Below, piece by piece: positions 1,372-64,000 of a DNA stretch of 64,000 bases. How positions within the stretch are numbered: position 1 is the first letter of the stretch; every line of letters begins with the position of its first letter. The stretch is taken from contig RDEW01000006.1 of assembly GCA_011109175.1 (NCBI GenBank), positions 595,232-659,231 of the forward strand, given 5' to 3'. Position numbers and translations under genes: made by a program. The notes below the pieces were generated by a model. It saw nothing but the letters and a program-made list of their open reading frames with translations. It was not told the DNA's origin and did no database searches. Source of the stretch: Dicyema japonicum. Taxonomy: Eukaryota > Animalia > Dicyemida.

Positions 1372-2314
1372 TTAATTAAAATCAAAAAAATCATATAATT
1401 CTTTTTTTGCCCTATCAAATAACAAAATATTTACTTTTCCTTCTCCATTCCAGTCTGAAAGTACGATTCCCTAACAGAGTGACTTTGTTGTGTCCGTCTA
1501 AATCCATAAATTAGGCGAGTACCCCAACTGAATCTCATTATTGACCTTTGTTTGATCAAATTTGGGCTTGACCGAGGAAGGTTTCTCCGAAAAAACCACA
1601 GATTTAATTTCCCTGGCGACTGTTTCTGGTTTCTCAGCCACGTGGGTCTTGCATAACTTCTCTTTGGCGCCCTTTTCTCGCTGATCAGCCAGTTTCTGAA
1701 GTTCTTTGAAGTCTTTCTTCACTCTTTGGGCACCCAAACCCTTCCTAGTCGGTTTTGGTTTCTCAGAATCTCCCGGGTTCATCGAAGGCGCCAAATTACA
1801 ACCAAATTGTAGAGGCCCGACCGCCGTATTACCGTCTCGTGAGTTGATTTGATCAGACAGCTGAAAATAATACAAAGATAACTTTTTTTCCGTAGTTTTT
1901 GACACTCTGAAGAAGATTTTCACGGTACATTGTCGCTGCCTTGGTTTTATACTTCTCTGTGCAGAACAGGGAATCAACGTTGAACTTGCTGAAGAAGTTT
2001 TTCTAAGGTAAAACGGGAAAAATACGGCGTTGGTGTTTCCACCACATTGCATAGCGTGTAGTTGGTCCCAGTCCCAATTGTTGTCCAGTTGGGTAGACTT
2101 TATGAACGAGAAGTGAACGCCCAGGGAACGGTGGAGGGAAGCACAGTCTATGCAGATGAATATACCGTATGTTATGCTACCCCATGAGGAGTTTGCGGAT
2201 CCACAGTCAAAGCATGTCTAAATTATAGTCACGTGCTACTTTATTTCCGACTAGGTTTAGTAAATCGTTAAAAACTGACGCAATTTCATCCTTGGTTGGG
2301 TTACTGGAAGACAT
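1372..2314 (-). CDS. ARFGAP2/3: ADP-ribosylation factor GTPase-activating protein 2/3 (Glo3-like), short form, multi-exon
   Basis: Spliced: [25 protein letters not shown]|[45 protein letters not shown]...MQCGGN (ArfGAP zinc finger) and later KGLGAQRV; GT-AG introns at 2218-2239 (22 nt), 2003-2025 (23 nt) and further 22-25 nt introns. Confidence 0.9.
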
Positions 2315-2849
2315 ATGGACACGTCACAAAACCAGTTTTAATTATTTTTTAATTTTAGTACATTTTGAAATTTATACTGTTTTTTAATTATATTAATTAT
2401 TATTCTTAAATAATCATCAAAGAAAATTTAATCTTATTGAATAGATTGATAACCCCGCTTTAGCTAAGCTGCCAGCCATTATGAATTACGCTGTCAAGTC
2501 AGATCGCCTCCAGAGATCCACTATTTTCACCTAAAGTTCTGGTGGTGCAGGGTAAGCAAAGAGATATTGAACTTCATTTTCATATACATATGGAGGTTGC
2601 GAGTCCTACTTTGATAGTTTTTGAGAACAATGATTTTGAGTGTGATTTCAGATCGAGTGGTTAGGGTCAAGTGATTGTTAGAAATATTGCGAACTCAGGA
2701 TTTCAAGTCGATCATCCAATGACAAGATCATCATCTGTAGGTAGTCAACACGGATCGATTTTAATCAGTCCGTTATAGATTTCACGACTGACTTTCTCAT
2801 CTGCACTAGTTTTTTTTATAAGGATGAATGATATGCATGAGTCCCAGCT

Positions 2850-3200
2850 TGAAAAGGCATAATTAGGCATCGTCCTGATGAATTGCTGTATCGGAGGGCG
2901 AGAAACTTTCTAGGTTGTACTTCTGAGTGACCTGTGTCCGCATGAAGAATATTGAAAGGAAGGATAATCTAGGATTTTTATGAAGTTTTTTAGGTTGCTT
3001 GATGAGGATTGAAACACCCAGTCAAAAGTCATCCAGTCAAGGTCTGAATAAATTGTGTAAAAGTAGAGATGATTGGATCATAATAGTTTTTTTAATTTTA
3101 TTACCCCCAGAAATTAACGACTACCAACAATATCCAATTCCCACGCTCTCATTCGCAAAAATCAAGTCTTCTATGCACAAGGGTACAAACCCCACCAAAG
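2850..3200 (-). mobile_element. decayed RT C-terminal fragment of the Jockey/I-like LINE family
   Basis: Broken frames include QQFIRTMPNYAFSSW, resembling YKQFIRPTMTYASPSW of the 39950-42598 element. Confidence 0.45.
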
Positions 3201-12600: not shown

Positions 12601-12959
12601 TATTTGAACATATCGGGATCACGTGATAGTTAGTTTCGATTTTTAACCGTGGTCTTGGGGTGTTTAAATAAATAAATAACCAACAAATAATTAATAATTA
12701 ATTAACAAATCCATCCAAAGTGGACCCCGCCGACATTATCGACGTTGCGTTGTTTCTCGATTGCAACAGAGATAAACTGGAGAAACCACCGGGTCTCACG
12801 TGGGTCGTGGCTTTTTAGTGTAACTAGGAGTCCAAGTTTCTTTAGGAAGCTAAAAATTAATTAAAAAATAAATTAAAAATAAATCTGAGAACGGTATCTG
12901 TCGCTTTTCCCAGAGCCACTACCATGCAAACTATCTGGTAGTTGCTTCAGGAGCGGAGT

Positions 12960-27248: not shown

Positions 27249-29243
27249 ATGTCGTCCCACAATATAGAAATTCTACCTTTAGGCATAATTTTGGGGTTAA
27301 AGTAGGGGCTGGACAAGATGTGGGGAGAAGCTGTATAATACTAAACATCGCTGAAAAACGAATAATGCTAGACTGTGGAATGCACATGGGCTACAGTGAT
27401 GAGGTATTCCCTTAATTAACAGTCAGAGAAGATTCCCAGACTTTTCTCTGCTTACTAATAGCGGCCAGAGTCTTACAGAATTGATCGATTGTGTGGTGAT
27501 CAGTCACTTCCACCTGGACCACGTGGGTGCTCTTCCTTACATGACACAAGTTATTGGATACAGTGGCCCTATCTATATGTCTCATCCCACAAAGGCTGTG
27601 TCCCCATTCTGCTGGTCTCTGACTTAATTTAATTTAGGATGACATGCGAAAGGTGATGGCCCACAAGGACAGCGAAGAAATTTTCACTTTTGACATGATT
27701 TCTGACTGTATGCGGAAGGTGACTCCACTCAGCATAAACGAAACAGTCAAAGTGGACGAGGATATTACTTTGAGGACCTTTCCTGCCGGTCACGTGCTGG
27801 GAGCAGTTATGTTTCTTATCACAGTCAATAACATAACTGTTCTGTACACAGTTGGGGATAAATTACCGATAATAGGGAGACTTTAACATGACTGCGGATA
27901 GGCACTTGGGGCTGCTAAAATCGAGTTTGGATTGGAACCCCACGTGCTAATAAGTGAATCTACCTATGCGACCACTATAAGACATCCAAAGAGATTCAGA
28001 GAGCGGGAATTTTTGTCGAAAATTCAAACTTGTCTCGAGGATGGTGGAAAGGTAACTTAGTGGATGAAGTCAGGTTCTCGTCCCTGTCTTCGCCCTAGGG
28101 AGAGCCCAGGAGCTTTGTATTTTGCTAGAAGATCACTGGGAGCGGTTGGGACTGAAATTCCCAATCTATTTCACAGCCGGACTGGTAGAGAAAGTAACAG
28201 CGAAGCTAATTTGAAGGCTCATCTTTATTACCGCTTGTTTGTCACATGGGAGAGCGAAAAGATAAAGGAAACCTTTGTGAACAGAAACATGTTTGAGTAC
28301 AAACACATCAAAGTGCCGAATTTGTTCATTTTAAGGTATTAGAGAAGACCACATGTGACGAGCCTGGTCCAATGGTTGTATTTGCAACTCCTGGTATGCT
28401 CCATGCTGGTCTCTCGTTGAAGTTATTCAAAAAGTTCCATAATGATCCAAAAAACCTGGTATTTTGACGATTTAACGGAAAGTTGATAATTCCTGGGTAC
28501 TGTGTGCAGGGAACGGTCGGAGAGCAGGTTGAGTGGGAAAAGATCCATTAAAGTGGACGGGGAGAAGGTACTTTTGGTCTTTAGTTTAAGTTGGAGGTGA
28601 AAATGGGGGTGGAATACTTGTCTTCTCCGCACATGCAGATATGCGGGGGATAGTACAACTAATCCAGCAATGCAAACCGCAGAATGTCGTATTAGTCCAT
28701 GGGGAGGCTGTAAAGATGAAGTTTTTGGCTGGGAGGATCATCGATGATCTGCGTATTGCTTAATTATGATGGTAGACATTCCTTGCTATACTCCAGCGAA
28801 TGGGAGACATGTCAAATTCTCGTCCACAAGCACAGATTTTGTTGGATAGAAAAGTCGACCAAGCCAGGTCACGTGTATGTGGAGATGGAGGGAGGTGTGC
28901 CCGTTGTGTGTGACCCTTCTAAGTCCTCTAGACGTCTGGGAATACCTCCATTGAAGGTGGCCCAGGTTTTCAGACGTGAGCACGTGTGCAAGTCTGGGGA
29001 ATACTATATAAAGCTGCTGGAAGGGTTAGAGAAGGAGTTGGTGCGTGGTGATATTGTAGATTTAAGTTGACTGAGGTTATGAAAGGGGAGAAGAACTACA
29101 AGGGTCGCATGGACGGTGTGACCGTGGAAATTCAGGAAGATAAAGGTGATGATGACTTCCTGGTGATTGCTTATGTGTCATGGAATTTAAGGGATTCGAA
29201 GAAGGGGATTTTGCTGTCTCAATTTATTGATAGTTTTGTTTAA
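27249..29243 (+). CDS. INTS11: Integrator complex subunit 11 (CPSF3L; MBL/beta-CASP endonuclease), multi-exon
   Basis: LPLG|[22 protein letters not shown]|RRFPDFS, SHFHLDH, AGHVLGA, YT|[23 protein letters not shown]; introns 27283-27305 (GC-AG), 27404-27426, 27615-27637, 27851-27875; apparent homopolymer indels near 27910 and 28530. Confidence 0.95.
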
Positions 29244-34807: not shown

Positions 34808-36465
34808 TTTTTTTTTTTTTTTTTTTATACTTTAATACTTTTTAAGGTTAATTTAAACAATAGAAGTCAGGTAGTTGCCGCTCTCACCGCGTGGCTGTTC
34901 CCTCTCAAAATTGCGAGCGAAATTCGCTCAAATAGCCAGCGGCGTTCGCGGAATCTCCAGTGCATGAGGTGATCCGGTTTCCAAGACGTCCGAAAAACTC
35001 GAGTGTAGAGGGGAGTAGGATCCGGAAGTCTCCATAGCAAGGGGAACAAATTTGACATCATCGGGAAGGTCGGCGTATTTAACGAGTTTGGCCTTCTCCG
35101 CCTTTACGGATGCTGAACAGGCCCTTGTAGCACTCTCGTGAAGATTTTTCTGGGCGAACGTGTCTGTACATGTCACATCCCAAACCAGTGGTTTCCCGGC
35201 CTCAAATGGAAATATGGTCATCCCGTCCGGTCGTTTCCCGTCACTTCTGCATAACCCGACCGGTTCAAGAATGGCCGAGTATCCAGCAGCATCCATAGCT
35301 CGCCTGACAATTTCATTCAGAGCCTTGTGCCTTGGGGATCTGCCAGCGCTCCTCCTGCAGGCGAGAGGGTGCAGGCCATAGCAGTCTATCAGGATGCCAC
35401 ATCGGCACGGGTGAGGTACACATACTTTCAGTCCCAGCCGCAGAGAGATACCAGTTCTAACGCATTCATCATCCAGAAAAGTGCCCAAAGCTCCATTGGG
35501 GATGGCGTTTAGCCAAGCTCCGCTCTCAGGGGAAGCCCCGAAAGCAAACAAGCGCGTCGGTGCTGATTGGCAGATTCTAGTAGGAGTCCAAATGATTTCC
35601 AGCATAATAAGTTGTCCAGGTTTCGCTGGCGATCTTGGGAAGGGGGCAGGGGGAGGTTGGTGGCATTCCAGGCTTCTCGTGCGTGGATTATCTCTTGGTC
35701 AGTTGAGAATTCGGGTGGGGAGTGTAGAATCCTCCTGACCAAAGGTTCGCAGGCCGTGAGTGATGATAAATGAGCGGGAAGTGAGACGTCCAAAGTTCGG
35801 CGGATTCCAAGACCCCCGAATCTAACTGGAGTGTAGCCTGCATCCATGTATCATCGTCGAATCGGACATTAAATATTTGCTCCGTCGAGCTGAGGAGAGA
35901 CAAATCAAAATTCTCGAGCAGCTCCTGTTGAGAATAATATGGAGCTGTCCTTAGTAGATAGGAGATTCTCTGGATGTTGAGACTTCTTTTCAATAGGAAT
36001 AGTGCTGTGTGCAAGTCCAGCAGCTGTAATCTTTCCAGCGAATCGCATAGGAGTCGTTTTTTGTCAAGGAGGACATGCTTCATCGCATTACTAGTGATCG
36101 GGGATCCAAGAAAAATCAATTCATTTTCAGGGGTCGAAATCCCACCGGGAAACAAGGAGTAAAATTTTTGAACAATTGAAGAGAAGTCATCGTCAGCAAG
36201 ACCACAGTTTGTTATTTCACATTTCGTTATATTCAACTGAAGACCCACCTCGGACAGCGCGGGGTGAGTACTTCTAATTCCTGGAAGACCGTTTCCGGGG
36301 GACCTCCTAAGACGGCGTCATCGAGGTACCAGATGTTGAGTGGGCATCTAGAGAGCTTCGTGATCCTCTCAATGCCGAGGGAGAACAGCAGTGGTCCGAG
36401 GGGGTCGCCCTGTTGAACACCTGAGGACGATGGAACTATGAAATCCCCGTGCAATAGTGATGAAG
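34808..36465 (-). mobile_element. 5'-truncated CRE-like non-LTR retrotransposon (RT + CCHC + restriction-like endonuclease) with poly(A) tail
   Basis: GVQQGDPLGPLLFSL, WYLDD, CRCG..HPLAC, RPDGMT..LVWDVTC, KLVKY..FVPLAMETSG; poly(T) at about 34806-34826 on +; TSD aaccagaaaatt at 34796-34807 and 36466-36477. Confidence 0.9.
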
Positions 36466-37218: not shown

Positions 37219-39858
<2,640 letters not shown>

Positions 39859-39949: not shown

Positions 39950-42598
39950 ACATTTGTTAAAGAAAATCACATTGATCTGTTGCTAATTCAAGAGTCTAAA
40001 TTTTCTCTACAGAATTCAACACCAGTATTTCCGGGATTCACAGTAATTCGCCGTGACAGAATTGGCAAACTTGGTGGGGGTCTTCTCACAGTTATCCGCA
40101 ACGGCATTCCGTTTGAGGACTTAACCAACAGTGCTTATACTATGCTTAAAAGATATGGAAATCTCGAACTTTTGGTTACCAAAATACGATTCCCAAGACT
40201 ATCAATAATAATTGTCAACGCATTTCTCCCATCGCTGAGTTCCTGCTCGTCCAGTGCCCCCAGACTTACTCCTCTCGCATCACTAAAGGATGTGATTATC
40301 TGTGGTGACTTCAATGCGAAGCACCCACTGTGGCTGACAGGACAAACCTACGACAAAAGAGGGAAGATGATAATTGAGGACCTCCACAGCCTATGTATAC
40401 TCAACGATCCTGCATCTCATACAAGAACACCTACTCGACGTAACGATAAACCTTCTTCTATCGACATCTCATTGTCATCACCGTCCTTGGCCCCACTTAT
40501 TGACTGGTCAGTGAAGTATGACACCAGTAGTGACCACAACCCAATATTTTTGGAGGTCAAACAAGGTCACGGATAAAAGGACAATGCCCAACAATAACTA
40601 ACTACAGCCTTGCGAATTGGAGAGAATTCAAGGAATACGTCGATAATTTTTTTTTTTTTAACAACTTTACTTTATTTAACAATAGAAGTCAGGTAATTGC
40701 CGCCCTCACTGCGTGGCTGTTCCCTCTCAAAATTGCGAGCGAAATTCGCTCAAATAGCCAGCAGCGTTCACGGAGATGTCCAGTGAATGAGGTGATCCGG
40801 TTTCCAAGACGTCCGAAAAACTCGAGTGTAGAGGGGAGTAGGATCCGGAAGTCTCCATAGCAAGGGGAACAAATTTGACATCATCGGGAAGGTCGACGTA
40901 TTTAAGATATTGTATTGGACTATTAAATTTCTTCACTTTTCCCTCCTTCGAACAATTAGTGAAATGGTTCAACTCCATTATAAACGATGCGAAAAAGAAG
41001 TACATTCCTATGGGGAGACAACCAACGTCATCAAAACGTTTCAACACAACGACGAAACATCTGATCAGAGAACGAAATAATCTAAAGATGGTAAAATCGC
41101 CAACAGAAGAGAACATCAGGAAAATACGAGAATTGAACAGAGAGATCGACAACAACATAAAGGCAGAAAATGCAAATAGATGGACGAGACTATCGAAGGA
41201 TCTCTGCAAAAACCCCCCAATGCAGAGAGTGTGGAAGTGGATCAAAAACATCAAAAGACCCTCCCCAGAGAGAAAAATCGAAGTCTACATAAAACCAGAC
41301 ACTCTGATAAAATATTATACGTCTATATCCTACAGGAAGTTTTCAAAAGAACACCAAGTATTCCTGAAAAAGATTACATGTGAACTGAAGCACCTAGGCC
41401 ATCGAGCCCTGAAACTATTAGCCTATATATTCAACCTATCCATTAACACAAATACAATCCCTGAAATATGGAAGAAGTCTCTAATCAGACCTATCCGAAA
41501 ACCCAACAAACCAATAGATGAACCATCTTCCTATCGCCCAATATCTATTCTAAGTCCGGTCTCAAGGATCCTTGAAAGGCTTGTTTTGGAAAAAATACAA
41601 GACTCAATCTCAATACCTCCGACCCAGCACGGATTCCGGGATAACCATTCGACCACAACACACCTTACAACCCTCACACAATTCATTGCGGAAGGATTTA
41701 ACTCCCCCAAACCCCATCAGAGGACAGTACTTATATCCGTGGACATCACAAAAGCGTTCGACTCAGTCCCTAGGAAACTCCTAACAAAGAAAATATATGA
41801 AACCAACATCCATCCGAACCTGAAACTTTGGCTTGGAAACTTCCTAAATGGAAGACGAGCACAAGTACTCTGCAACAACATCAAATCAAGATCTCGCTAT
41901 TTCCCAAATGGAGTCCCTCAAGGCTCACCACTATCACCCCAACTCTTCAATCTCTACATAAACGACATGCCACAAACCTGTAATGAAAACTGTCTAATCT
42001 TCTCTATGCCGACGATATCATTCTTGCTTCCAAGAACAGAAGCATTCAATCAGCGACTCAGTTGGCTCAACAAATGCTCGACAACTTGGAACTATGGCTC
42101 TCGAAGCGGAGACTTGACACATCAGCAGCAAAGTCCTTTGTCACACTGTTTACCACCTACAAGAGACAGCTCTGTATCGAACCAAAAGTCTTTATGAAGA
42201 ACGAAGCTATCTCTATTAACAAAACACCGAAGATTCTGGGAGTAACCTTTGATCAGGGACTCACCTTTATCCGGCATGTTGAAAACAGAGTAACTTCTGC
42301 TCTGAAAAAAATGAGAATTTTAAAAGTGCTCTCAAAAACACTTAGAGATCAAACTGGGATCCTTGCCACGATTTACAAACAATTTATCCGACCAACGATG
42401 ACGTATGCAAGTCCTTCATGGGCAATGCAAATGTCACGATCTTCCTCATTGAAATTATCCGCAATCGAGGAGACTGCAATAAAGTTAATTGGACCAGAAC
42501 ATAAAAACTTTTTAATTGAACTACAACGGAAACAACGCTCCGTGAAAAAGGCTGTTATTATTATTATTTCCATTTCAATGTATAGTGTAGTGTCATAA
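39950..42598 (+). mobile_element. 5'-truncated APE-RT LINE (Jockey/I-like), interrupted by a CRE-like fragment
   Basis: LIQESK, RRDR..GGG, GDFNAKHPLW, SDHNPI (APE); YRPISIL, QHGFR, DITKAFD, GVPQGSPLSP, YADD after a frameshift, KILGVTFD (RT). Confidence 0.92.
40646..40905 (-). mobile_element. short 5'-truncated CRE-like copy with poly(A), inserted antisense in the LINE
   Basis: Near-identical to 34855-35082; poly(T) on + at about 40646-40658. Confidence 0.9.
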
Positions 42599-47536: not shown

Positions 47537-49394
47537 GGAATTTTTTTTCATCGCTATCTTTAATGATTTATTTTATTTAATAATCCCGAAAAGGGAACAC
47601 CAAGAAAGGAGTAAACCAACTAATTAAATGATCCTGGTACACCTCAAAAGGATCGAGAGGTTTTTCAAAGAATCTTTCATGATTGAAACTTGATCTCTTG
47701 ACTTAGTTTTTTACGTGTTTAAATAAATTTATTCAACCAACAATTCGATTCTGGTTGCTGAAACAACTCCGAGAGCGCCTTGTCCAATTGAACCCTCTGC
47801 CCATATGGCATCTCAGGGCTCTGCCTCCTATACTCCAGTGTCAGGCTCTCTAGGGTCCGCTTTAATACAGTGGACTGTAGATAGGCCTGGAGCTTCCTAT
47901 CTACCCCCAACTGCTTCAGATAACCTTTGTGGTACTTTGTTGCAATTCCTTCCCACGTCATTACTATTGGAATAACGAGGACCTTGCAACCAAGCATCTG
48001 CCCCATCTCGTTTGCAAGCAAGTCATACTTCCTTTTTTTCTCTATCTCCACAGTCTGCAAACAGTCTTGAGACGTAATGCCAACCTCTATGATAAGGACT
48101 TGGCCAGACTCCTTATCGTGTACCACAATGTCCGGTTTATTGTGATTGACTAGCACCGAGGTACGGATAACACTGTTTAACTTAATATGAACCCTGGTGT
48201 TATCTACTACAGATTGCACCTTATGTGTCCACAACTTTCTGGTGTGGCGAATACCATACTTATTGCATAGTAGAAGATGAAGACTCCTTACTACCTCGTT
48301 ATGCCTCCACACATAGTCGTGGCAGAGCATGGATCCACATCGAGTGGCTAAATGATCAACCGACATGCTCCTTGACTTACAGTGGGGACATGTATTTGTT
48401 GATCGACCCCAAAAAATATTGCGGTCTTGCATATACGTGTACAACGCCTCCGATCGAGGTGAGTTGTCACCGTATTTTAGCCATATTGTCGACGACTTAA
48501 GGTCGACATGTGGGTTGTCCAATGCTCTGAAGAGGACCTTATGAAGGCTTTTTAAGTTGATCTTTTCCATCAAATTATTATATTGTAATTCGATCAACGC
48601 CTTCACATTTACTAGCCCACCATCATCAACACCATACTTAGCAGACAAAAAATCTGATAGTGCCTAGGTGGGTTGCCCGTCTTTTCTCGGTCGTTATTAT
48701 GGCGTGCTTCCTAGCAGACACACTTGACCCAGCTATCAGGGTGTCGTGCATTCGCATTAGGATACGCTCACTTAGTTGGACTACTCCACACAGTCCACGG
48801 CCGAATTTATCACGGGGTAAATATAGTCTCTCCTTATTGGCTGCCAGCACATGGACATGGTTCTCTCTGAGTACTCCACGGATCATAACATCCATCTCAT
48901 CATACTCCTTGGGCTCAAACTCCACAACACCTATGTAGTAGTTTAGCAGCGAGACAGCATACTCATTTAATGCTAGGAACAAATTCCTTGCATTTAGAGA
49001 CGTCTTACATAATAACGCTGCTCTTTTACGAATGCCTTCAGTAATTTGTCGATTTGTCTCAGGCATTATAAGGGACTTTGGAGTTTCGGTAACACCCAGA
49101 TACTTATATCCTTCGTGTTCCTCTAGGACTCTTACTAACTCGCTACATACTTGCGTGTTAGTAGCAGACTTTGAATAATTCAAATCTAGTCCTATACTCT
49201 CAAAGAATTCCCTGACACAGACCCCCATGGAGTAGAGCTCCTTGGCTGTTCGAGCATACATCTTCAGGTCATCGACAAAAAGAAGGTGATTTGTGCTGAA
49301 ACAAACAGCCTCACAATGAACTGGTATTTGCTCTAACCGGTCATTGAGACGGAGACTCAATGGCTCCAAACAGAGAACAAAGAGCAGCTGAGAC
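47537..49394 (-). mobile_element. 5'-truncated R4/NeSL/Dong-like non-LTR retrotransposon (RT + CCHC + RLE) flanked by a 34-bp TSD
   Basis: SQLLFVLCLEPLS, NHLLFVDDLK, YKYLG, CPHC..HLATRC, RHNEV, KPDIV..IIEVGI, KKRKY; a single frameshift near 48640 in a T run; identical 34-mers at 47503-47536 and 49395-49428. Confidence 0.92.
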
Positions 49395-52253: not shown

Positions 52254-52314
52254 GTCGTCATGTGATTTATTTTTCTAGGTGGCGCTTAGTGCCAGGTTGG
52301 CACGAAAAAGATCA
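52254..52314 (+). repeat. Family A repeat core; the element spans about 52160-52420
   Basis: Reverse complement of the 47070-47320 copy, including flanks. Confidence 0.75.
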
Positions 52315-52560: not shown

Positions 52561-52730
52561 AATTAGTTGTTTACTTTAATTTCTTTCTTGATGCATCCGG
52601 GGTTAATAAATTAAACATTAATATTTTGTTAATTTTCAGCCGAGAACCCTTAATGCAGATATGTTATGTTGGAGGAGATTGGAGTTATTGAAAACAGCAC
52701 CTAAATAATTAGCGAGAGCCGAGAGATGCG

Positions 52731-54480
52731 TTATGTTGAGCTTTGGGACCAAAAACGTGTTATGAACTCGAGAAAGGAAGATACTTGTATATTAACTTGA
52801 GAACCACTTGTCCGAGAATTTTGGAAATGACAGATAATAGTGAAATTGGTAGATATGGTCCTAGATCTGAAGGATCTGTATTGGGCTTCAGGATTGGGAT
52901 GATTTTTGGGAATCCGACAATAAGAAACAAAACGATGTCGGTCCTCAAACTGTGGTCGTTTGATCAAATACATTATTTTTCCACTACGTCTACCCAATTC
53001 TCAACTCAACAAGTTAGAATTCTCTCTACGGAGGGACATCCAGACAAATCTGGCTTGTCTACGCAGTGGACACCACATCACTATCAATATACGGATATAA
53101 ATTAGTGAATCAAAAATGTCAATTTTTTGCAACTTCTCTGAGTTAACAGCACACCTTTTCAATGCTCAGAATTCATACCATGTCCACCTGACATGCTGAA
53201 AGTGACCGATTTATTGCAACGACCAGAATTTGCCGCCTATTATTTGAAAACCACTGCCCTTTATACGGGTTGGTAAGGCAGGGGTACCTTAACTAACATG
53301 CTCGGTAAATTGACTTTCAGACGCATTCGATATTTTAATTTGTAAATAAATAAAGTGCTGACTATTAATTTAATTGATAATTGAGAAAATAAAAATATTT
53401 CGATAAAATTTAAAATCGTTAAATATTAATAGGAAACTTAACTAAGCACTTTTCTGCAATAAATTGTATTTTTTTTATTTTGAAAAATGCACTTTTTAAC
53501 AAAATAATAATTGTGGCAGTGACACCGTCATCAGTGATGCATCACTGCGGAACCGGGTTGTCTCAGGAATTTTCAGGTAAAAAAGAAAAGAATTAGAACT
53601 TATCAACGCCTTCGATGCCTTTGATGCATTTGCCTTGGATTTCTGCCTAAGCTTGTGTTTTGCAAATCCTAAAGGTGGAGATTGATCGACTTGTTTTAGG
53701 AGACGCTTAATGGCAGGCTGGCATCCAAAAAGGACCTATATCTTCCCTACTCCAATGAATGGGTTCTCAAAAATAAAGGAAACGGATGGACGTGATACTT
53801 GAACAGCATATTTCTTACACCGACAGTTAGTTAAGTTACCACGGCAACTTTGGTGTGGTACAAGTTCAGACATTCAGAAAGGTGATTTGTTGTCAACTAG
53901 GGGAGGTTGAAAGGAACAGAGGACATCTTTCGCATCATCAAGTCTACATAGATCGGTAAAGAAGAGACTCCGACCATGGCAACTGGATTTACCTTAATTA
54001 TACGTTAATCAACTTTTCCGGCGTCAATATTAACTTTAACTTAAACTAATCAAAGAGATCTCGCAGAGACCGCATATGAAGTATAAGCTCATGATGATGA
54101 GAAGGGATATGTCTCACTCCGACCGGAGAATCTGGATAAAGCACATTTCAGGTATATCTTATTAGTCAAGCATGACTCCCATGATGTTTGTCGCAGTATT
54201 GATTAAGATAATCGTGCTATTAGCAAAGGATTCTCGGTTTGATGCTGTAGTCCCTAAGGACTTCGTTTGGGAAACTGTAAGCTTTAGTTGAAAGAACTAT
54301 GAGGTCAGAGTATTTTAGAGCTCATTATGACCAATGTGGATGTCTGACAAATATTACTAGCAGCAATGTCAATATCATCTGTGTAGGATAGCAGGATGAA
54401 TTTTTTGTTCTAGGCTGTGGCAAATCGTGTATGAATAGGCTGAATGGAAGGAGTGAAAGACAAGATCATTGGGAACTCCA
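52731..54480 (-). mobile_element. scattered decayed RT fragments of the Jockey/I-like family (about 52731-53100 and 53830-54480)
   Basis: IIPILKPNTDPSDLGPYLPISLLSVISKIL; GVP..; LLSYTDDI. Confidence 0.65.
53674..53736 (+). repeat. Family A repeat core (decayed)
   Basis: ttaggagacgcttaatggcaggctggcatccaaaaaggacc. Confidence 0.6.
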
Positions 54481-54783
54481 TGTCTATCAGAAAAGTAACT
54501 GGCAAAAGCGGATGTTCCCAGAGATCCACCAGGTATGACTGCTGTGATGCAGATCTTGAAGGCGGACTGTGGCCAGTCTTGTGAGATCTTCAGTTGGCAG
54601 GTGTGTCGAATCCAGCAGCAATAAATAGCCGATAATATTATATTGAAAAAATGTCACTAATTTATTGAATATTTCCTATTAATTGAACTATTTAATATTA
54701 AATTTTACAAATAATTAAATAAATTATATTTAAATTGTTATTAAGTTGTCAAGTAATGCTGTTTTTTTCAATAGAATACAAAT

Positions 54784-55721
54784 ATGGATGATATTGAGGG
54801 AGAACTCGCAACCAGGGATTTTATAGTGGCCAACAGATACAGACTAATCAAAAAAATTGGTAGTGGATCCTTCGGAAAGATCTACTCGGCTATTAACGTA
54901 AGCAACGGCGAAGAGGTCGCTGTCAAAATGGAGAATTCCAACAGTCAGCACCCACAACTGGCATTTGAAAGCAAAATATATCGATTCATGCAGGGAGACC
55001 AAGGGATTCCTAGTCTGAAGGGGTATTACGAGCAGAACAGCTACAACATTATGGTGATAGAACTGCTTGGTCCCTCACTTGAGGATCTCTTCAACCTTTG
55101 TAACCGAAGATTTGAACTGAAAACGGTCTTAATGTTGGCAGATCAGATGCTGAACCGACTCCAATACATCCACTCCCGATGTTTCATTCACAGGGACATC
55201 AAACCTGACAACTTCCTGATGGGAGCTGGTCGTTACTCAAGCAAACTATTCATAATCGACTTTGGTTTGGCCAAGAAGTACATGAGTTCCACTACAGGAG
55301 CGCATATTCCGTACAGAGACAACCGCAGTCTTACGGGACGGCGAGATATGCCAGTATAAACGCCCATTTGGGGATTGAGCAGAGCAGAAGGGACGATCTG
55401 GAGTCCCTGGGATACGTCCTGATGTACTTTAACCGAGGAAGTCTTCCGTGGCAGGGACTCAGGGCGGCCAATAGAAGGCAGAAGTACGAGAAGATCTCGG
55501 AAAAGAAGATCTCTACGACAATTGAGCAGCTTTGTCGTGGATTTCCTAACGAATTTGCCATGTATTTGAACTACTGTCGGTCTCTGAGGTTCGATGAGGT
55601 CCCCGACTACTTTTACTTGCGTCAACTATTCCGTATTCTTTACAGGAACATGAACTACCCCAATGACACGCTATTTCAATGGAGTCTGATGCCTAGATCT
55701 ACCCCTGCTAAGGATAAATGA
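54784..55721 (+). CDS. CSNK1A1: casein kinase I alpha-like; no intron seen; one apparent 1-nt deletion near 55336
   Basis: [51 protein letters not shown]; then LTG(T)[27 protein letters not shown] in the shifted frame. Confidence 0.93.
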
Positions 55722-56436
55722 TTTAACATTTTTATTTTAATATTTTTGATTTTAAACAATATTGATTTGTGAATTTATGTCGATAATCATCTTCCTTACA
55801 TTGACTGCTTAAACGTGCACTTTTGTGGTTTGAATAACCACGATTTGTTAAGTATTATACTAAAGTGCATTGATTTATGGTAATTGAACTGGCACGTGGC
55901 TGTGCGCTTTATATACTATGGTTGAGTTCGTCGTTGGATCTTCTAGTGTACGTGGATTAAATAAGATCGGATTTGCGAAGGTACCGGGTAGTGATGTCCG
56001 GCTCAATATAACAGAGATTAGTTGGGGATTTTGACGAGGGTTGTTTGTCTTGAGGCTTATTTTTTCCAACAGATTTTATTAGCTAATCTGCCACGTCATT
56101 ATTAAGCAACTATTTATCTAATATTTCTGAATCTTACATCCCCCATTGTCAGTTTGTTCTCATTCTAATAAACCTGTCTTTAGAGGTGTGTCATTTCAAA
56201 ACCACATGCTTCCTCTACAGGGGACAATTCTATTAATCTCTCTAGCTTTCGTCCTTGATGGGAGAGCTTACGAATCCCCAAGAATAAAAGCTCACATGAG
56301 GAGATATTGCGGACCTTATAGCATGCCAGAGATCTTGTAGTTGACTAAGAATAAGGCTCTCCCTAATAAAGTTACCTTTATGGTAATATGTGTAGCACCA
56401 TGCAGCTGAATAGTTAATTAGGTTGAGGTAAGTTAT

Positions 56437-56660: not shown

Positions 56661-56749
56661 AATTGAAAAAATATAACTAAAATTAATTATTATGTATAGC
56701 TTTATTTTTTTTGAACCACACGAGAATTTATTTTTTAAAATTATAAAAA

Positions 56750-57375
56750 ACTAGGACGACAGAATGACGATGGCGTTACCTCTGATAATCGCCATTTCGA
56801 ACCTCTGCTTCAACCAGAGCCTATCCTTTGACTCACACCTTTTTGAGGCTAGTTTGCTTCCAATGCTGGAGAGAAAGGCGTCCGTCTTCGCTCCTACGGT
56901 TCAGTTGTCTTCACAGCAATGGAGGTGAAATGGTATTGGTCTCCGAGGGATTCGTATTTACGGATCTTCTTGGCCTCCGCCTGGTCGGCTGCGTCTCCAG
57001 GAGAGTGCGTCGCCGTCAGCGATCTGGCCCCTGAGAAGGTTTCTACACATGTTGCGTCCCAAACGAGTGATTTTCCGTGGGAGTGTGGGAATAACGTCAT
57101 GGCATCCGGCATCTTCCCGTCGCCTCTGTCTAATCCCAATGTTCCAATTGGGCCGGAAATCCCGCTGCCTTGAGGGCTCAAAAAATGATGTCATTGAGGG
57201 CTGCGTGACGCGGGGTTCGACCAGCGATTGTCGGCAAGAGAGTGGATGTAAGCCTTTCGTATCAACGTCCCCGCCGCAACGGCATTTGTGTCTCTGGAAT
57301 ATGTCCACTCCTAGGCGCAGTGCTACCCCGATCCTCAGGCTGTTTTCGTCAAGGAGGGTCCCCAGATGTGGGTCA
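56750..57375 (-). mobile_element. decayed 3' part of a CRE-like retrotransposon
   Basis: HKCRCG..GLHPLSC, PDAMTLFPHSHGKSLVWDATCVETF, AEAKKIRKY, WLKQRFEMAIIRGN. Confidence 0.8.
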
Positions 57376-58129: not shown

Positions 58130-60893
58130 AAAAGTGTGGAGCATGCGAAAACCCACAAGAAAAAGTCACGAACGCTCTGTACTGCCCAAAAAAATTAAAA
58201 CTCGAGGCGGAGATGTTTTCAACTCAGTAATTTCTCCAAGAATATTATACGGTTTGAGGGAAGGTAAGGTTCACAAGAGATTCGATAACAAATCGTCTTC
58301 CTTTCTACATGCAATCGGATCGTCGATATAAAAGGAAGGACAAAAGAGGAATGGTCAATTCAGAACATTTTCATACAAATCATAAAAGGAATGCCTCTCA
58401 ATCACGAGAATTGCTTACTAGTCAATAATACTTTATTCGTTGGCATAAAAGTACTTCCCTATCTATGAAGGAGGATGGTTTTCCAGGTACGCTCTAATTT
58501 TGTGCGGTGACGTCGAATCCAACCCAGGCCCTGAAACCAACCTGGTCCAGATCAATATAAACGGAATACGAAGTCCGCCACTTACTCAATAGTAATGAAG
58601 TTGACATTGCTCTAGTCCAAGAGACAAAACTACAACCAAACATACGAACCCCAACCTTTCCCGGATACTCCATTATCCGTAAAACAGAAGGATTAAGCTT
58701 AATGGAGAACTAATGACACTAATAAGAAATGGAATTCAATATGAAGATGTTTCAAACAAAATCTCTCTATCCAGAAGATGACCCTTTGGGACTAATTGGC
58801 ATAAATGTTAGAATTCCTAGGAAAACTATATTGTCAATGTATATATTCCCCTACTACATCCCGTCCAAGTGGGTACTACCCTACAGATTTTCTCAAACGT
58901 AATACTGTGACATCAATGCCAAACATCAATTATGGTATGAAGGCCAGAAACCAGACAGTAGAGGAAACCTACTGGCCAGAAACTTGGGACAATTTTGTAT
59001 ACTGAATAACACCATAACAATACGAGAACACCTACTCGAAAAGGAGACAACCTACATCCCCTGACCTCTCCTTATGTTCCCATCAATGTTTCCCTTCATC
59101 AACTAGACTGTAAAATATGAACTAAGAAGTGATCACAACCCTATTATGATGAAAATCAACACTGCAAATAAATTTATCAGACAGAATTCCACTTTTTAAA
59201 TTTTGAAAGCGCAGATTGGTCCAACTTCTCTAATTACATGGACACCAATGTGGAAGTATTCTACGCATTGGTATTCTCATCAATTGACCACATGATCAAA
59301 ACTTTCACGGACATTATACTCAAAGCAAGAAAACTATTCCAATGCCATCAAACAAGGAATACCTATTATAATACAAAAACACTATCAGAGAAAGAAATAA
59401 ATTAAAGAAGCAAAAGGAATTATCAAATGACGATTTCCAAAAAATGAAATCCTTGAATATACAAATTAAACAAGTTACCCAGTCTAGAATTAAGAAGCGA
59501 TGGACATCACTTATTGATTCTCTATCGCCAAATACATCCGAGACGCTGATATGGAGGAAAATCAAATATTTGAGAAGTTGCAATGAAGGCTCTGAGAAAG
59601 TCCTCCACGGACAGGGATGTAGCAACATCGACCCAAATATTTTAATGAAGCACTATGTCGCGATCAGCCATAAAAATTTCTCGAGGGAACACATAGTCTA
59701 CAAGAAGTTGTATCCATCATATGATTTGATTGTCTTTACTCCACGAGAAGTTCGAAACGCAATCATGGATGCCAAAAACTCCCGTTCCCGAGGTGCTGAC
59801 AATGTCTCGATGATGGAACTGAAACACCTTGGTGAAAAAGCGACCAAATTCCTATCATACGTTTATACTCTATCTGTGAACAATAATATGATACCTTCTA
59901 TATGGAAGAAATCCATAATTCTGCCAATTCGGAAGCCAAACAAACCTGCAAACGATCCCTCTTCTTATCGTCCAATTGCAATACTATGTGCAATGTCCAG
60001 CATTTTTTCAATGCTAGAGGCTTATCTACGGCATGGTCGAGGAATGGCTTCAATAGACTTGAAGAAAGCATTCGACTCCGTTTCCCGGACGCTGCTTATA
60101 GAGAAAATTTCTAACACTCTTATAAATCCAAACATTAAAAGATGGCTGTCGAACTTTTTAAGTGGAAGAAGAGGCAAGTGATGTCAGACAACAGAAAATC
60201 TAAATCCCGTTTTTGCCGAATGGTGTCCCTCAAGGTTCACCTCTCTTTCCCTGCTCTTCACTGTAAACCTGACTCCCACCAACGACGATCCCGATACATT
60301 AATACTCTCATACGCAGATGACATTGTTCTTTCAACGAGAGACTCTAACTATGAGAAGGCAGGGATAAAACTTCAAAGTTATATTAGTATGCTGGAACAT
60401 TGGCTCACATCAAATCGACTGGACGTTTATAACAATTTACATATAGAAGATCATCATACTCTCCCAAAATCAAATTGTTTGGATATGAAATTCCTATGAA
60501 TAGGTCTCCAACAATACTAGGATTAAAGTTAGATCCTCTCCTGACATTCGACGAACACGTCAATGACGTTATTACCAAAATCAGGAGGAGGACCAACATA
60601 TTAAAAATTTTGTCCCGATCACAATCGGGCACAACACCTTCTTACTACAGAACATTTACAGACAATACATACTGCCAGTAATCAAATACACATGTCCTTC
60701 CTGGAGCTCGATGATTTCTGAATCGTCGTCTCAAAAATTAGAAACCGCACAACTTGCTGCCTTGAAAATAATAAATAAGAAAACTGCGGATAACGTATTG
60801 AATGTTAAAGAACACCTAAGGTGGAGAGTGAAGTCATTTCTACAGTGGGCAATAAAAACCGGCTGTCCGCTTTCACTCTCTATATCTGACTAG
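58130..60893 (+). mobile_element. degenerate near-full-length APE-RT LINE (Jockey/I-like) with an N-terminal 2A-like motif
   Basis: VQINING, LVQETK, SDHNPI (APE); SYRPIAIL, IDLKKAFD, GVPQG, YADD, ILGLKLD (RT); many frameshifts; possible PHD-like CGAC..YCP at about 58135-58190. Confidence 0.85.
58491..58532 (+). other. 2A-like (StopGo) ribosomal skipping motif ALILCGDVESNPGP
   Basis: gac gtc gaa tcc aac cca ggc cct = DVESNPGP, in frame with and immediately before the APE domain. Confidence 0.85.
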
Positions 60894-61517
60894 ACGGTGT
60901 TTCTTTGGCTTAAATAATAATAAAAAAATCTAGAAAATGCGGGAAATCTATGGAGAATGAGACCGTCCCCGTTTCTACCAATTCTGTTGGATCTTCGAGG
61001 ACCCCGAACGAGAGCCAGAACCCGGAAAACCGGGATCACTTAGTTAGTAATTAACTTTTTCTAATCCGATGATCTTGGGGTAAAAAAAAGAAAAAAGACT
61101 CCCACTTCACTTATTGGAAGCAAGATCAGTTGCCTATTAATTAATTTGTCTGACTTGCTGGCTTACCTCTTCTGCATGAAATATCTACATTGCTTCATAA
61201 CATATGAAAACCCTTGTCTTCTTTTAGTGTTTTGCAGAATGACCTACTCAAGAGAAACAAACAGCTCCTAACAGATAATCCTCCAAGTTTTTTAATTTGG
61301 GTCGGACTGGATTTTAACCTGGTTTCTTAATGACCCACATGACCTTTGTTCAAAAGTTCGGATTTCTGAAATCTCCCATGTCGGTCTCGTTGTCCATTCC
61401 CAGGAGGAAAAGGACAAGAATTTTCATTCATCATGAAATAAGTAAAAACTTAAAAATCAAAACTAACAAAAAATAAGACAAAACTTAAATTCAAAGGAAA
61501 GACTGTAAACTAAATGA

Positions 61518-64000
61518 TTACCGTTTAATCAAAGGATCAGTCTGTGTAGGAGGTGGAGGGGCACCGCGTCTGTCGAGAACATCAATGTAGTCATCTACAA
61601 TCTTCCTCTGTTCATCAGGAAAACAATCCAAGTACAAATAACGACTATCGTTCTACAAATTACTTCCAAACAATACCCTGAGGACAGCATCGACATCATC
61701 CCATTGAATTTCCCTATTCTTCAGCATCTCCTTAGTCCTAAAAATAACACCAAAAATACTTGTAGGTTATGAATTTAGTCTCATTCAAAAGTTCACGCAA
61801 ATCTGACTTGGCTTTAGCAGTCTTCTCCTTCATGAAGGTGTCGAAGGCTTTCTCCCGTTTCTACCAAATAAAAAACCAAGGAAATAATAAAAAACGAAAA
61901 ACCCACCCGATCACTAGATGAAAATTTAAGATAACGATGGTCGTCCCTCACAAACTTCTTGACATCCTTCCAGGAGGAGTCCAACTTAATCTACCAATAA
62001 GACCATCCAAACCTCAGCAGTCTCAGCAAGTAACGTGTAAAACACAGCTTTATTCTTCTTAGAAAGCATCTTTTGATGTTCGCTACACATATTCTTAATA
62101 TCTTCCCTATCAAGATCAGCCACAGAACACCATCGAGAGTCATCCTTTAACAGAGAGACCACATCCTCAAAATCCATTTTATGACTCTTAACCTAACAAT
62201 CACACGTGACCATACCAATTCTGACAACATACACGTTAACTTTTCCTTAGCTTCTGCCAACTGATGCAATCTACGTTCCTTATCAATCTCACGCATAGAA
62301 GTGCTCAGAGACTCCTGTACTTCCATTTGACGTTCCCGAAGACTTTTAGCCTCTCTTTCCTCTTTACTATTAATCACCTCAACATCCATCACATCAGGTG
62401 GGTTCTCCTATCATAATCACGTGCACCCATACCGATTGCTTAGAACTCGTCTCCAGTGAGTGAATATAATCCTCAAACAAATCTGCTCGTCGATCACTGC
62501 TACTGATTGCCTTATATCGGGGATCAGAGTCAATTCTACGTTTGACATCTCTCCATCGATCACCAACTGATATGTTCGTCTCCTTCAGTAGCTCGACAAA
62601 CTCTTTCGATCGAGAAACCTACTATAACAAAATCATCAACCTTCACTCCTTCAGACTTCTCCCGTCTGTGCTTAAGTTCACTTACAAAATCGTAAAACAA
62701 TGACTCTCGGTCACGTGTCCTATCAACCCCTGAAATCTGCTGTCTTTGGAAGAACGTGCAGCAAATTCTGAGTAAGTTGATCTAAACATAAATCAAAAGT
62801 TAACCGATGAGTAAGATTAGCCTCCCCTAATAGTTCCCTGAAGTCTTCCTTACGTTTTTTATGCTGTTTATTCCGTTCTGATCTCTCCGCCTCAACCTTA
62901 TCCTTCACATACTGTTCAAACACGTGTTGTCGTTCCTTGCTTAGCAATAATGTATAACGTTTATCAAAAACTATTTTCTGTAATTCTTTCTCAAACGTAG
63001 AATTCGTTGAAACCTAGAGTAAACAAAAATGAGCCAACGTTCTTTTCCGCTAACAACTCCTTGAACTGCTCTACTCGTTCTGCGTACGGTAGTGTCGACC
63101 TGAGATTGCTCACCTTCTTTTCCTCTTCCACATTCGTTTCAGCCTTATTGGAGTCAACATCAGTCCGTTTACTGCTACTGGTCTCCACCAGTTCCTCTCC
63201 AGCACGTTTGACCGCTAAATCTGAGTTTATCATGCTACCGGTGTCGTCGTGAACTAAAATAAATCAAATACATACGTTCGATTGGTCGTTCCACTCCTCC
63301 TCCAATTTTGGTTTGTGTTTGATCAACTGGGACACGTCCTTTCTACCCCTTAGTTCGTCAGGACAGTGCCACACCGATCGCTTCTCTACCACGTCAAAGA
63401 AAAACACTCGGTCATCCCCCGTCCACACGACCGACCTTAGGCTTAAACAGAGTCTCTACCAGTTAGTCCCAGACACCAATGTCTTACTGACTGGCTTCGT
63501 CTTATCCAACACTTGCCTAATGGCTGCTTGCTAGAGGATTAGACAGAACACATATACCCTTGACTCATCATCCCTGGAAGAATCTACACGTGACACCACA
63601 AAGTACCATATTTCTGAGCAGCAGGTTTCTCCCACACAGTGTCCCCGATATTTTGTTATAGTAGTACGGGGTACCGTCAGAAACATAGTAAACCAACCAG
63701 GTTGGGTTCTCGGGTAGAGGCTTAAATGTTTAAGAACAATACCATTCCCGGGTTCATGGTGGTTGTTGATGGTACATACTGTTGTTGCATGGCCATGTAC
63801 TGTTGGGAAAGGACTTGGGACTGCTGATAGGCCATAAAGGACTGGTTGGCCATGTCGTTTTGGTAAACGGTCATCCCTTACTTATTTATCAGCAAAAACC
63901 TTGGTAGGGATTCATCACGGTCGTTTGATATGGATTGGTAGCAGCATTCTAAAAATAAGTTCAGTCATTACCGTGTTGGAGATCGATGAATGAGTAGCTG
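61518..64000 (-). CDS. TCERG1: transcription elongation regulator 1 (CA150; WW and FF domains), 5' part beyond the window
   Basis: WW segment VVWTGDDRVFFFD...WHCPDEL; FF repeats (FKELLAEKNV, LLSKERQHVFEQYVK, DSRFQGVD..DRESLFYDFV); C-terminus RRGAPPPP; introns 62193-62215, 62408-62432, 63584-63606. Confidence 0.92.

What the first reader, a model, noticed from the sequence alone, without database searches (positions are those of the whole stretch)
1639..63592. CACGTG is a highly iterated palindrome in host DNA but absent from young retroelements
Seen: I counted about 54 CACGTG by eye (e.g. 1639, 2230, 4859, 8465, 16938, 17100, 17367, 17518, 27520, 27791, 27941, 38845, 38984, 39019, 39189, 39368, 39644, 62203, 62418, 62712, 62921, 63587). 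At an estimated GC of about 38%, about 8 are expected, so enrichment is roughly 7-fold. I noticed only about 7 of the same-composition palindrome GTGCAC, though that scan was not exhaustive. The motif lies inside exons in several reading frames and apparently replaces conserved residues (INTS11 HFHLDH-V-G where human has C). The five best-preserved retroelement bodies (about 9.5 kb: 34808-36465, 39950-42598, 47537-49394, 56750-57375, 58130-60893) have none, where the rate of the rest of the window predicts about 9. Older decayed repeats do carry some (13411, 24184, 24860). Known analogies: cyanobacterial HIP1, Neisseria/Pasteurellaceae uptake sequences, and the Cbf1-bound CDEI E-box of yeast centromeres. 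Inference: a genome-wide self-mark that accumulates with residence time. It could be a bHLH-ZIP anchor for chromatin, replication or holocentromere function, a product of methylation or repair bias, or a signal separating host from foreign or eliminated DNA. I know of no description of this in an animal genome, but I cannot search the literature.
Basis: partly seen in the sequence, partly recalled or inferred. Interest (0 to 1): 0.88.

Follow-up and report, generated by a model that had tools for sequence, protein, structure and literature searches.

The report
Iterated CACGTG palindrome in dicyemid DNA
In the tiny genome of the octopus parasite Dicyema japonicum, the six-letter palindrome CACGTG is written about 22,000 times into the animal's own DNA, several times more often than chance, yet LINE retrotransposons almost lack it; I found this pattern described only for bacteria.

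Summary
The window holds 55 CACGTG, against 6.6 expected from dinucleotide shuffles. It holds only 7 GTGCAC. The five retroelement bodies (9,555 bp) hold none.

The excess is genome-wide. The 67.5-Mb, 377-scaffold assembly matches the published Dicyema japonicum genome. It holds 21,851 CACGTG against 4,535 of the reversed hexamer.

- **Context:** 89% of sampled sites lie in unique sequence.
- **Coding:** sites fall in all three codon phases and exceed a synonymous-codon shuffle 5-fold.
- **LINEs:** LINE-protein-like DNA has 1 site in 38.9 kb. The rest of the sample runs at about 0.55 per kb.

New results here:
- Sites repel each other below about 100 bp. Genome-wide pair counts are 415, 642, 834, 785 and 523 for distances 20-59, 60-99, 100-139, 140-179 and 300-339 bp.
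- There is no sharp 150-180 bp spacing.
- I found no cytosine-5 or N4/N6 DNA methyltransferase.
- One-letter neighbours are not depleted.
- At least 15 of 29 HLH domains carry the CACGTG-reading basic region. Many of these belong to multi-copy families.

Best reading: a force acts on the exact double-stranded hexamer, most likely through dimeric Max/USF-type bHLH-ZIP proteins. Accumulation with residence time is only suggested. The scan already holds many notes on this motif from other pieces of this genome.

The parts
1639..63592 (.). 55 dispersed copies of the palindrome CACGTG
   Evidence: 55 sites against 6.6-9 expected, with no conserved flanks; 89% of sampled sites have unique flanks.
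27403..29067 (+). INTS11 gene body with 5 sites (27520, 27791, 27941, 28870, 28981). Site 27520 encodes His-Val where human and fly have His-Cys.
   Evidence: metallo-beta-lactamase domains. (INTS11, E = 1e-25, alignment). (independent DNA contigs confirm the sites).
38396..39649 (-). EDEM-like GH47 mannosidase gene with 6 sites in 0.8 kb (38845-39644). Two of them sit on the conserved dipeptides His-Val and Thr-Cys.
   Evidence: PF01532. (homologs and alignment). (phases).
1501..2235 (-). ArfGAP gene with sites at 1639 and 2230
   Evidence: PF01412..
62150..63881 (-). FF-domain gene with 5 sites (62203-63587)
   Evidence: PF01846..
12620..12802 (.). Old dispersed repeat carrying two CACGTG 177 bp apart. 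Both motif positions are shared with copies elsewhere.
   Evidence: flank clusters 1 and 2.
34808..36465 (-). Multi-copy TE coding body with no CACGTG
   Evidence: 0 sites. (24 protein-level paralog matches; DNA paralogs up to 91%).
39950..42598 (+). LINE (endonuclease plus reverse transcriptase) with no CACGTG
   Evidence: PF14529, PF00078. (97% copy). (DNA paralogs, median 93%).
47537..49394 (-). Very young LINE 3' part with no CACGTG
   Evidence: at least 39 genomic copies at 96-98% identity. (RVT_1).
56750..57375 (.). Multi-copy element fragment with no CACGTG
   Evidence: copies at 88-93% identity.
58130..60893 (+). LINE body with no CACGTG
   Evidence: copies at 84-96% identity. (RVT_1, weak).
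54775..55718 (+). Protein kinase gene without any CACGTG. This shows that not every resident gene carries the motif.
   Evidence: PF00069..

Best explanation
CACGTG is a true highly iterated palindrome of the resident DNA of Dicyema japonicum. There are about 22,000 copies, densest in and around the animal's own genes, and LINE retrotransposons almost lack it.

The copies arose one by one, by ordinary point substitutions of several kinds, in unrelated sequence contexts. The force therefore acts on the exact hexamer as double-stranded DNA.

The most likely reader is a dimeric class-B bHLH-ZIP protein (Max/Myc/Mad, USF or MITF type), whose canonical site is this hexamer. Sites would be retained, or fixed preferentially, because they are bound, serving as general chromatin or transcription landmarks of resident genes. 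A second site within about 100 bp would add little or interfere, which would give the observed short-range repulsion. LINEs lack the motif because active lineages enter without it and are not under that pressure.

Shown: the excess, its genome-wide extent, the independent origins, the excess beyond codon usage, the TE contrast, the repulsion and the presence of cognate factors.

Inferred: that these factors bind the sites, and that binding is what maintains them.
For: 1. Real and genome-wide. The window has 55 sites against 6.6 expected. It is the top hexamer in a separate 20 x 10 kb sample, at O/E 4.0. The whole genome holds 21,851 against 4,535 of the reversed hexamer.
2. Not repeat-borne. 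Flanks are not conserved, and 124 of 140 sites have unique flanks.
3. Beyond coding constraints. Sites fall in phases 0, 1 and 2 at 15, 11 and 6. There are 18 sites against 3.3 +/- 1.8 under synonymous shuffling. His-Val is written CAC GTG in 8 of 14 cases.
4. Only the perfect palindrome is enriched. The nine one-off neighbour pairs have O/E 0.68-1.62, and CAGCTG and GTGCAC are ordinary.
5. Private gains in old repeat copies come from CACATG, CGCGTG, CTCGTG and CACGAG. These include transitions and transversions, so no single mutational chemistry explains them.
6. Site-site interaction. Genome-wide pair counts per 40-bp bin are 415, 642, 834, 785 and 523 at 20-59, 60-99, 100-139, 140-179 and 300-339 bp. 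The uniform expectation is about 290. The reversed hexamer shows no such trend: 15, 21, 14, 26 and 13.
7. Cognate readers exist. Of 29 HLH hits, at least 15 carry the His-Glu-Arg basic region of CACGTG binders. Their closest solved relatives are Max/Myc and USF2/MITF.
8. Methylation-driven routes are weakened. No PF00145 or PF01555 hit was found.
Against: - No binding, chromatin or expression data exist.
- Every animal has Max, USF and related factors without such an excess, so their presence discriminates little. Much of the HLH count comes from two multi-copy families that may be transposon-borne.
- Sites are mostly intragenic and about as dense outside long ORFs as inside them (0.90 against 1.1 per kb). 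They are not concentrated at promoters, which is unlike ordinary E-box regulation.
- Weak selection on about 22,000 sites is hard to sustain in a parasite with a presumably small effective population. That favours a drive-like process.
- Some resident genes have no site, for example the kinase gene.
- Site conservation between species, the test that supported selection for HIP1, could not be run. No close dicyemid relative was found in the protein database.
Confidence: 0.45

Rival explanations
1. A neutral, function-free drive. A sequence-specific repair or gene-conversion bias, as once proposed for HIP1 or as Vsr/Dcm acts on CCWGG, converts near-cognate hexamers to CACGTG in any DNA that stays long enough. 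Young TEs have simply not been exposed.
For: - Repeats at least 90% identical to a paralog are at chance (O/E 1.07). Older repeats and unique DNA are at O/E 5-6.
- Private gains occur in non-coding old copies.
- Density is similar inside and outside long ORFs.
- A drive needs no selection on about 22,000 sites.
Against: - No cytosine-5 or N4/N6 DNA methyltransferase was detected.
- Neighbours, including CATGTG/CACATG, are not depleted (O/E 1.2).
- Gains use several substitution types.
- A site-independent bias does not predict the two-fold deficit of pairs closer than 60 bp.
- LINE-like DNA of low protein identity is also empty.
Confidence: 0.25
2. A self or retention mark. CACGTG tells resident DNA from mobile DNA in the programmed chromatin diminution, selective amplification and circular-DNA formation reported for dicyemid somatic cells, or in a transposon-control pathway.
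For: - Host DNA and LINE DNA differ about 20-fold. LINE-like DNA is, if anything, below composition: 1 site against 4.35 expected.
- Dicyemids are reported to eliminate chromatin and form extrachromosomal circles (PMC6543705, citing Noto 2003 and Awata 2006).
- An earlier scan note (s1-315938) proposes a Max-like bHLH-Zip ORF inside a retrotransposon. Here, HLH loci form multi-copy families, one inside a 932-aa open frame.
Against: - It is not known which sequences are eliminated.
- Kilobase stretches of non-TE DNA in the window also lack the motif (28981-33284, 52167-55893).
- Some old repeats carry it.
- The under-representation in LINEs is weak (P about 0.07).
Confidence: 0.15
3. An ordinary effect: composition, codon or dipeptide bias, a dispersed repeat, promoter E-boxes of a regulon, or an assembly artefact.
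For: The order-4 Markov expectation is 33, so O/E falls to 1.65. The window is richer than the genome average, at 0.86 against 0.32 per kb.
Against: - Dinucleotide shuffles never exceed 13.
- The order-4 expectation is built from the motif's own pentamers.
- The synonymous shuffle gives 3.3 against 18 observed.
- 89% of flanks are unique.
- Sites lie in gene bodies and in non-ORF DNA, at about 1 per kb.
- Independent contigs confirm the sites.
Confidence: 0.03

Closest known systems
HIP1 (GCGATCGC), the highly iterated palindrome of cyanobacteria (Xu, Lawrence & Durand 2018, PMC5861425)
   Same: - A short exact palindrome, several-fold to many-fold over-represented genome-wide.
- Dispersed in unique contexts, inside and between genes and in all codon phases.
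- Cause unknown, with the same debate between selection and biased repair.
   Different: - The host is an animal nuclear genome.
- It is a hexamer identical to the class-B E-box.
- The excess is 3-5-fold genome-wide and 6-8-fold in this window, against 15-300-fold for HIP1.
- No Dam-like site and no methyltransferase were found.
- Short-range (<100 bp) repulsion is shown here. HIP1 is reported to have 10-90 kb periodicity.
- Cross-species conservation has not been tested.
Class-B E-box sites of Myc/Max/Mad, USF, MITF/TFE and yeast Cbf1/Pho4
   Same: The sequence CACGTG is identical, and it is a palindrome suited to a dimer. The genome encodes several proteins with the His-Glu-Arg basic region.
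   Different: - Ordinary E-boxes are promoter or enhancer elements and are not over-represented genome-wide.
- Here there is about 1 site per kb, in gene bodies and non-coding DNA, overriding codon choice.
- Flank preference is weak.
DNA uptake sequences (DUS/USS) of Neisseria and Pasteurellaceae
   Same: A genome-wide 'self' word that is scarce in foreign DNA and accumulates through a drive-like process.
   Different: Those are 9-12-bp, non-palindromic words tied to natural transformation. No comparable uptake route is known in an animal.
Vsr/Dcm very-short-patch repair, which shapes CCWGG and its neighbours in enterobacteria
   Same: A protein-directed repair bias can raise one short palindrome.
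   Different: It needs a cognate cytosine-5 methyltransferase and leaves the T:G-derived neighbour depleted. Neither is seen here.

Membership tests
Highly iterated palindrome (HIP1-like) | Exact short palindrome strongly over-represented across the whole genome relative to composition | tested here: met
   21,851 CACGTG against 4,535 GTGCAC; top hexamer in 192 kb sampled elsewhere; 55 against 6.6 in the window.
Highly iterated palindrome (HIP1-like) | Copies dispersed in unrelated contexts, not carried by a repeat | tested here: met
   no conserved flanks; 124 of 140 sites have unique flanks.
Highly iterated palindrome (HIP1-like) | Present in coding DNA in all phases and in non-coding DNA, beyond codon usage | tested here: met
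   phases 15/11/6; 18 against 3.3 under synonymous shuffle; 0.90 per kb outside long ORFs.
Highly iterated palindrome (HIP1-like) | Individual sites conserved between species more than background (the evidence for selection in HIP1) | not testable with these tools
   no close dicyemid relative in the protein collection. No second dicyemid genome was within reach.
Class-B E-box / bHLH-ZIP binding sites | Core CACGTG, and cognate factors with the His-Glu-Arg basic region encoded in the genome | tested here: met
   at least 15 of 29 HLH hits; nearest solved relatives are Max/Myc and USF2/MITF.
Class-B E-box / bHLH-ZIP binding sites | Located in promoters or enhancers of a target gene set | tested here: not met
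   sites are mostly inside gene bodies and also in non-ORF DNA, at about 1 per kb. There is no site in the 2.4 kb upstream of INTS11.
Class-B E-box / bHLH-ZIP binding sites | Occupied by the factor in vivo or in vitro | not testable with these tools
   No ChIP, DAP-seq or chromatin data were available. Only DNA contigs were found.
Methylation-linked repair bias (Vsr/Dcm type) or restriction-modification footprint | Cognate DNA methyltransferase present | tested here: not met
   no PF00145 or PF01555 match in six-frame searches of the assembly. The assembly is incomplete, so absence is not proven. Vsr itself was not searched.
Methylation-linked repair bias (Vsr/Dcm type) or restriction-modification footprint | Depletion of the deamination-derived neighbour (CATGTG/CACATG) | tested here: not met
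   O/E 1.20-1.25.
DNA uptake sequence | Non-palindromic 9-12-mer linked to natural competence | tested here: not met
   the unit is the bare hexamer palindrome with no extended consensus.

The most novel reading that the evidence does not exclude
CACGTG is the cis-element of an animal system that tells resident DNA from mobile DNA. An enlarged set of Max-like bHLH-ZIP proteins reads about 22,000 evenly spaced landmarks in the host's own genes. These landmarks guide chromatin retention, amplification or transposon control during the programmed genome rearrangements of dicyemid somatic cells. At least one retrotransposon lineage has captured a Max-like domain to exploit the same landmarks.
Probability: 0.15. 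Interest if true: 0.95.

Novelty: new variant of a known kind. Interest (0 to 1): 0.8.

Why it matters
Hyper-abundant short palindromes are known from cyanobacteria, and their cause has stayed open for decades. A clear counterpart in an animal nuclear genome was not reported in the genome paper or in any paper my text searches returned.

It would show that a DNA-level pressure can override codon choice, and occasionally protein sequence, in a metazoan. It would also provide an eukaryotic system in which candidate readers (bHLH-ZIP factors) are named and testable.

The host-versus-transposon contrast and the short-range repulsion give concrete, falsifiable handles. Practically, the motif is a strong compositional marker of resident against mobile or contaminant DNA in dicyemid assemblies.

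Tried and rejected
- **Wider genome sampling.** Class-level statistics therefore rest on 292 kb plus whole-genome pattern counts.
- **A 150-180 bp preferred spacing.** It looked real in the window (8 of 54 gaps). It is rejected genome-wide: 834 pairs at 100-139 bp against 785 at 140-179 bp.
- **Neighbour depletion as a signature of directed conversion.** Not seen.
- **RNA evidence for exons and transcription start sites.** No RNA run was found, and the runs laid were DNA contigs.
- **Cross-species site conservation through protein homologs.** Only distant EDEM relatives were found, at most 57% identity.
- **Pfam on ORFs around 13411 and 24184, to confirm 'old decayed repeats'.** No hits.
- **RT or other transposon domains next to the multi-copy HLH ORFs in the loci held.** None found.
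- **Literature.** There is no mention of CACGTG, methylation, bHLH or motifs in the D. japonicum genome paper. Two full-text searches returned no report of a genome-wide CACGTG excess.
Full report
**Identity of the genome.** The window is G000:C334:595232-659231. The assembly has 67,542,437 bases in 377 contigs. The published Dicyema japonicum genome is 67.5 Mb in 377 scaffolds, with 36.7% GC, 49% repeats and 5,012 genes (PMC6736024). I take the organism to be D. japonicum. That paper does not mention CACGTG, methylation, bHLH or motifs.

**The observation**
- GC is 39.7%.
- Expected numbers are 9.0 from base composition, 6.6 +/- 2.7 from 100 dinucleotide-preserving shuffles (largest 13), 9.3 at Markov order 2, 14.6 at order 3 and 33 at order 4.
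- The order-4 figure is conservative to the point of circularity. CACGT is followed by G in 55 of 80 cases.
- GTGCAC, which has the same composition, occurs 7 times.
- CACGTG is the most over-represented of all hexamers in the window, with z = 27 against 11 for the next.
- The 15 bases on either side show no consensus.
- In 292 kb of this genome, only 16 of 140 sites share flanks with another site, in five small clusters. The copies are therefore independent, not members of a repeat.

**Genome-wide extent**
- Twenty 10-kb pieces from 19 contigs give 62 sites in 192 kb. CACGTG is again the top hexamer, at O/E 4.0 against a dinucleotide model.
- A pattern search of the whole assembly gives 21,851 CACGTG and 4,535 of the reversed word GTGCAC. 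The ratio is 4.8.
- The density is 0.32 per kb, against 0.86 per kb in this gene-rich window.

**What the window contains**
- Resident genes (Pfam and PDB searches): ArfGAP, PRA1, a CTLH protein, INTS11, an EDEM-like GH47 mannosidase, a metallophosphatase, a protein kinase and an FF-domain protein.
- LINE retrotransposons with endonuclease and reverse-transcriptase domains.
- The five 'retroelement bodies' are all multi-copy.
- 47744-49400 has at least 39 genomic copies at 96-98% identity.
- 41021-42452 has a 97% copy.
- 58456-61096 has copies at 84-96% identity.
- 56706-57373 has copies at 88-93% identity.

**Resident DNA against transposons**
- The five bodies (9,555 bp) hold no site. Their own composition predicts 1.1 and the rate elsewhere in the window predicts 9.7. 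A circular-shift test that respects clustering gives P = 0.024.
- I enlarged the sample by marking all DNA in 292 kb that matches the window's LINE proteins by tblastn. This is 38.9 kb with 1 site. Composition predicts 4.35, and the rate in the rest of the sample (about 0.55 per kb) predicts about 20.
- By DNA self-comparison, repeats at least 90% identical to another copy have O/E 1.07 (2 sites in 16 kb). Repeats at 80-90% have 5.0, repeats below 80% have 6.3 and unique DNA has 6.1.
- The contrast is therefore solid. Its reading as an age effect is less so.
- Three sites in old copies are clear private gains, where the other copies read CACATG, CGCGTG/CTCGTG or CACGAG-like words. Most motif-bearing middle-aged repeats share the site with their relatives, so they inherited it.
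- LINE-like DNA of low protein identity is also empty, though it may belong to other young families.

**Coding DNA**
- Of the 55 sites, 32 lie in non-TE open frames of at least 70 codons (1.1 per kb). The other 23 lie in other non-TE DNA (0.90 per kb).
- The codon phases are 15, 11 and 6.
- In 46 non-TE open frames of at least 90 codons there are 18 sites. Permuting synonymous codons gives 3.3 +/- 1.8, with a maximum of 10 in 2,000 trials.
- His-Val is written CAC GTG in 8 of 14 cases. The dipeptide itself is not enriched: 14 observed against 11.4 expected.
- In the EDEM-like gene, two sites sit on dipeptides conserved in homologs (GHV, TCT). They exploit synonymous freedom.
- In INTS11, the site at 27520 coincides with Val where human and fly INTS11 have Cys, in HFHLDH-C-G.
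- The pressure therefore mostly bends codon choice and occasionally the protein.
- Independent Logan DNA contigs of two runs cover INTS11 and reproduce all five sites.

**Clues to mechanism**
1. Only the perfect palindrome is enriched. The nine strand-symmetric one-letter neighbours have O/E 0.68-1.62, within the normal spread of hexamers. CATGTG/CACATG, the deamination product, is at 1.2.
2. Gains use transitions and transversions.
3. Six-frame searches of the assembly find no cytosine-5 methyltransferase domain (PF00145) and no N4/N6 methyltransferase domain (PF01555). Bacterial control genomes do ring. The assembly is incomplete and exons are short, so this weakens a methylation-linked route but does not exclude it.
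4. Sites interact. Genome-wide, the number of sites with a partner at start-to-start distance 20-59, 60-99, 100-139, 140-179 and 300-339 bp is 415, 642, 834, 785 and 523. The uniform expectation is about 290 per bin.
   - Clustering alone gives a curve that falls with distance.
   - The two-fold deficit below 60 bp (415 against 834, about 12 standard deviations) is a real short-range repulsion with a range near 100 bp.
   - The reversed hexamer shows no such trend (15, 21, 14, 26, 13).
   - A site-independent mutational or repair bias does not predict repulsion. Binding with a footprint, or selection with diminishing returns, does.
5. The hexamer is the canonical site of class-B bHLH-ZIP dimers.
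   - The genome has 29 HLH matches.
   - At least 15 have the His-Glu-Arg basic region.
   - The nearest solved relatives of four of them are Max/Myc and USF2/MITF.
   - This count is inflated. Twelve loci fall into two multi-copy DNA families of 7 and 5 members at 77-97% identity. One lies in a 932-codon open frame. An earlier scan note (s1-315938) proposes a Max-like ORF inside a retrotransposon.

- **Best-supported explanation.** A directional force acts on the exact double-stranded hexamer, most likely through dimeric bHLH-ZIP binding. It keeps or fixes sites in resident DNA at a spacing of at least about 100 bp. LINEs stay at or below chance. Confidence is 0.45.
- **Rivals.** A function-free repair or conversion drive (0.25). 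A resident-versus-mobile DNA mark tied to the reported chromatin diminution of dicyemids (0.15; PMC6543705). An ordinary or artefactual cause (0.03).
- **Closest known system.** Cyanobacterial HIP1 (PMC5861425). This case meets HIP1's descriptive criteria but differs in host, sequence, magnitude and spacing behaviour. The conservation test could not be run.
- **Earlier scan notes.** The scan has noted the same motif on many other pieces of this genome (51 notes). Those I read agree on the excess and on the transposon contrast.
- **New in this report.** The whole-genome counts, the pair-distance curve, the methyltransferase searches, the neighbour spectrum and the HLH inventory.

Noticed in passing
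L028, L029, L037, L038, L042, L045, L049 (G000:C24:918304, C68:816531, C220:3545, C361:50367, C340:72387, C361:111218, C312:1799333): Seven loci with a Max/Myc-like HLH domain form one DNA family at 77-96% identity. The C220 copy lies in a 932-codon open frame. No RT domain was found in the 3-kb loci held.
   Followed up: partly
L032, L036, L043, L051, L052 (G000:C112:1734553, C124:1085138, C314:42466, C268:315964, C312:1950809): A second multi-copy family (82-97% identity) encodes a Max/Mad-like basic region, AHHNLLEKERRNNLK. L032 (3.1 kb) has no CACGTG at all.
   Followed up: partly
window 47744-49400: A 1.66-kb LINE 3' segment is present in at least 39 genomic copies at 96-98% identity. This points to a very recent burst. 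The first look gave 5,735 candidates for the 16-kb query.
   Followed up: partly
window 27601, 27907, 28528, 28801 (INTS11 coding region): Independent Logan DNA contigs of two runs carry 1-2 extra bases here at full depth. The reference therefore probably has small deletion errors inside the gene. The frame break at 27624/27638 may be such an error rather than an intron.
   Followed up: no
window 54775-55718: This protein kinase gene has no CACGTG, and the nearest sites are at 52167 and 55893. Kinase and dynamin ORFs in the random sample (L008:9402-9959, L009:1441-2064) also have none. Motif load therefore varies widely between resident genes.
   Followed up: no
window 12620-12802; L010:7557, L022:6136, L013:1027, L017:4401, L022:2788: A dispersed old repeat carries two CACGTG at fixed positions, with cores GGGATCACGTGAT and GGGTCTCACGTG(C/G)GTCGTGGC. 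It is one of the few families that carry the motif ancestrally.
   Followed up: partly
window 26800-27100, 30540-30940, 32316-32700: These are very high-copy short repeats. Summed contig depth is hundreds to thousands of times the single-copy level in the DNA runs. One of them matched at least 70 genomic places at 73-90% identity.
   Followed up: no
292-kb sample (window plus L004-L035): LINE-protein-like DNA holds 1 CACGTG where its own composition predicts 4.35 (P about 0.07). This may hint at avoidance by active LINEs rather than mere youth.
   Followed up: partly
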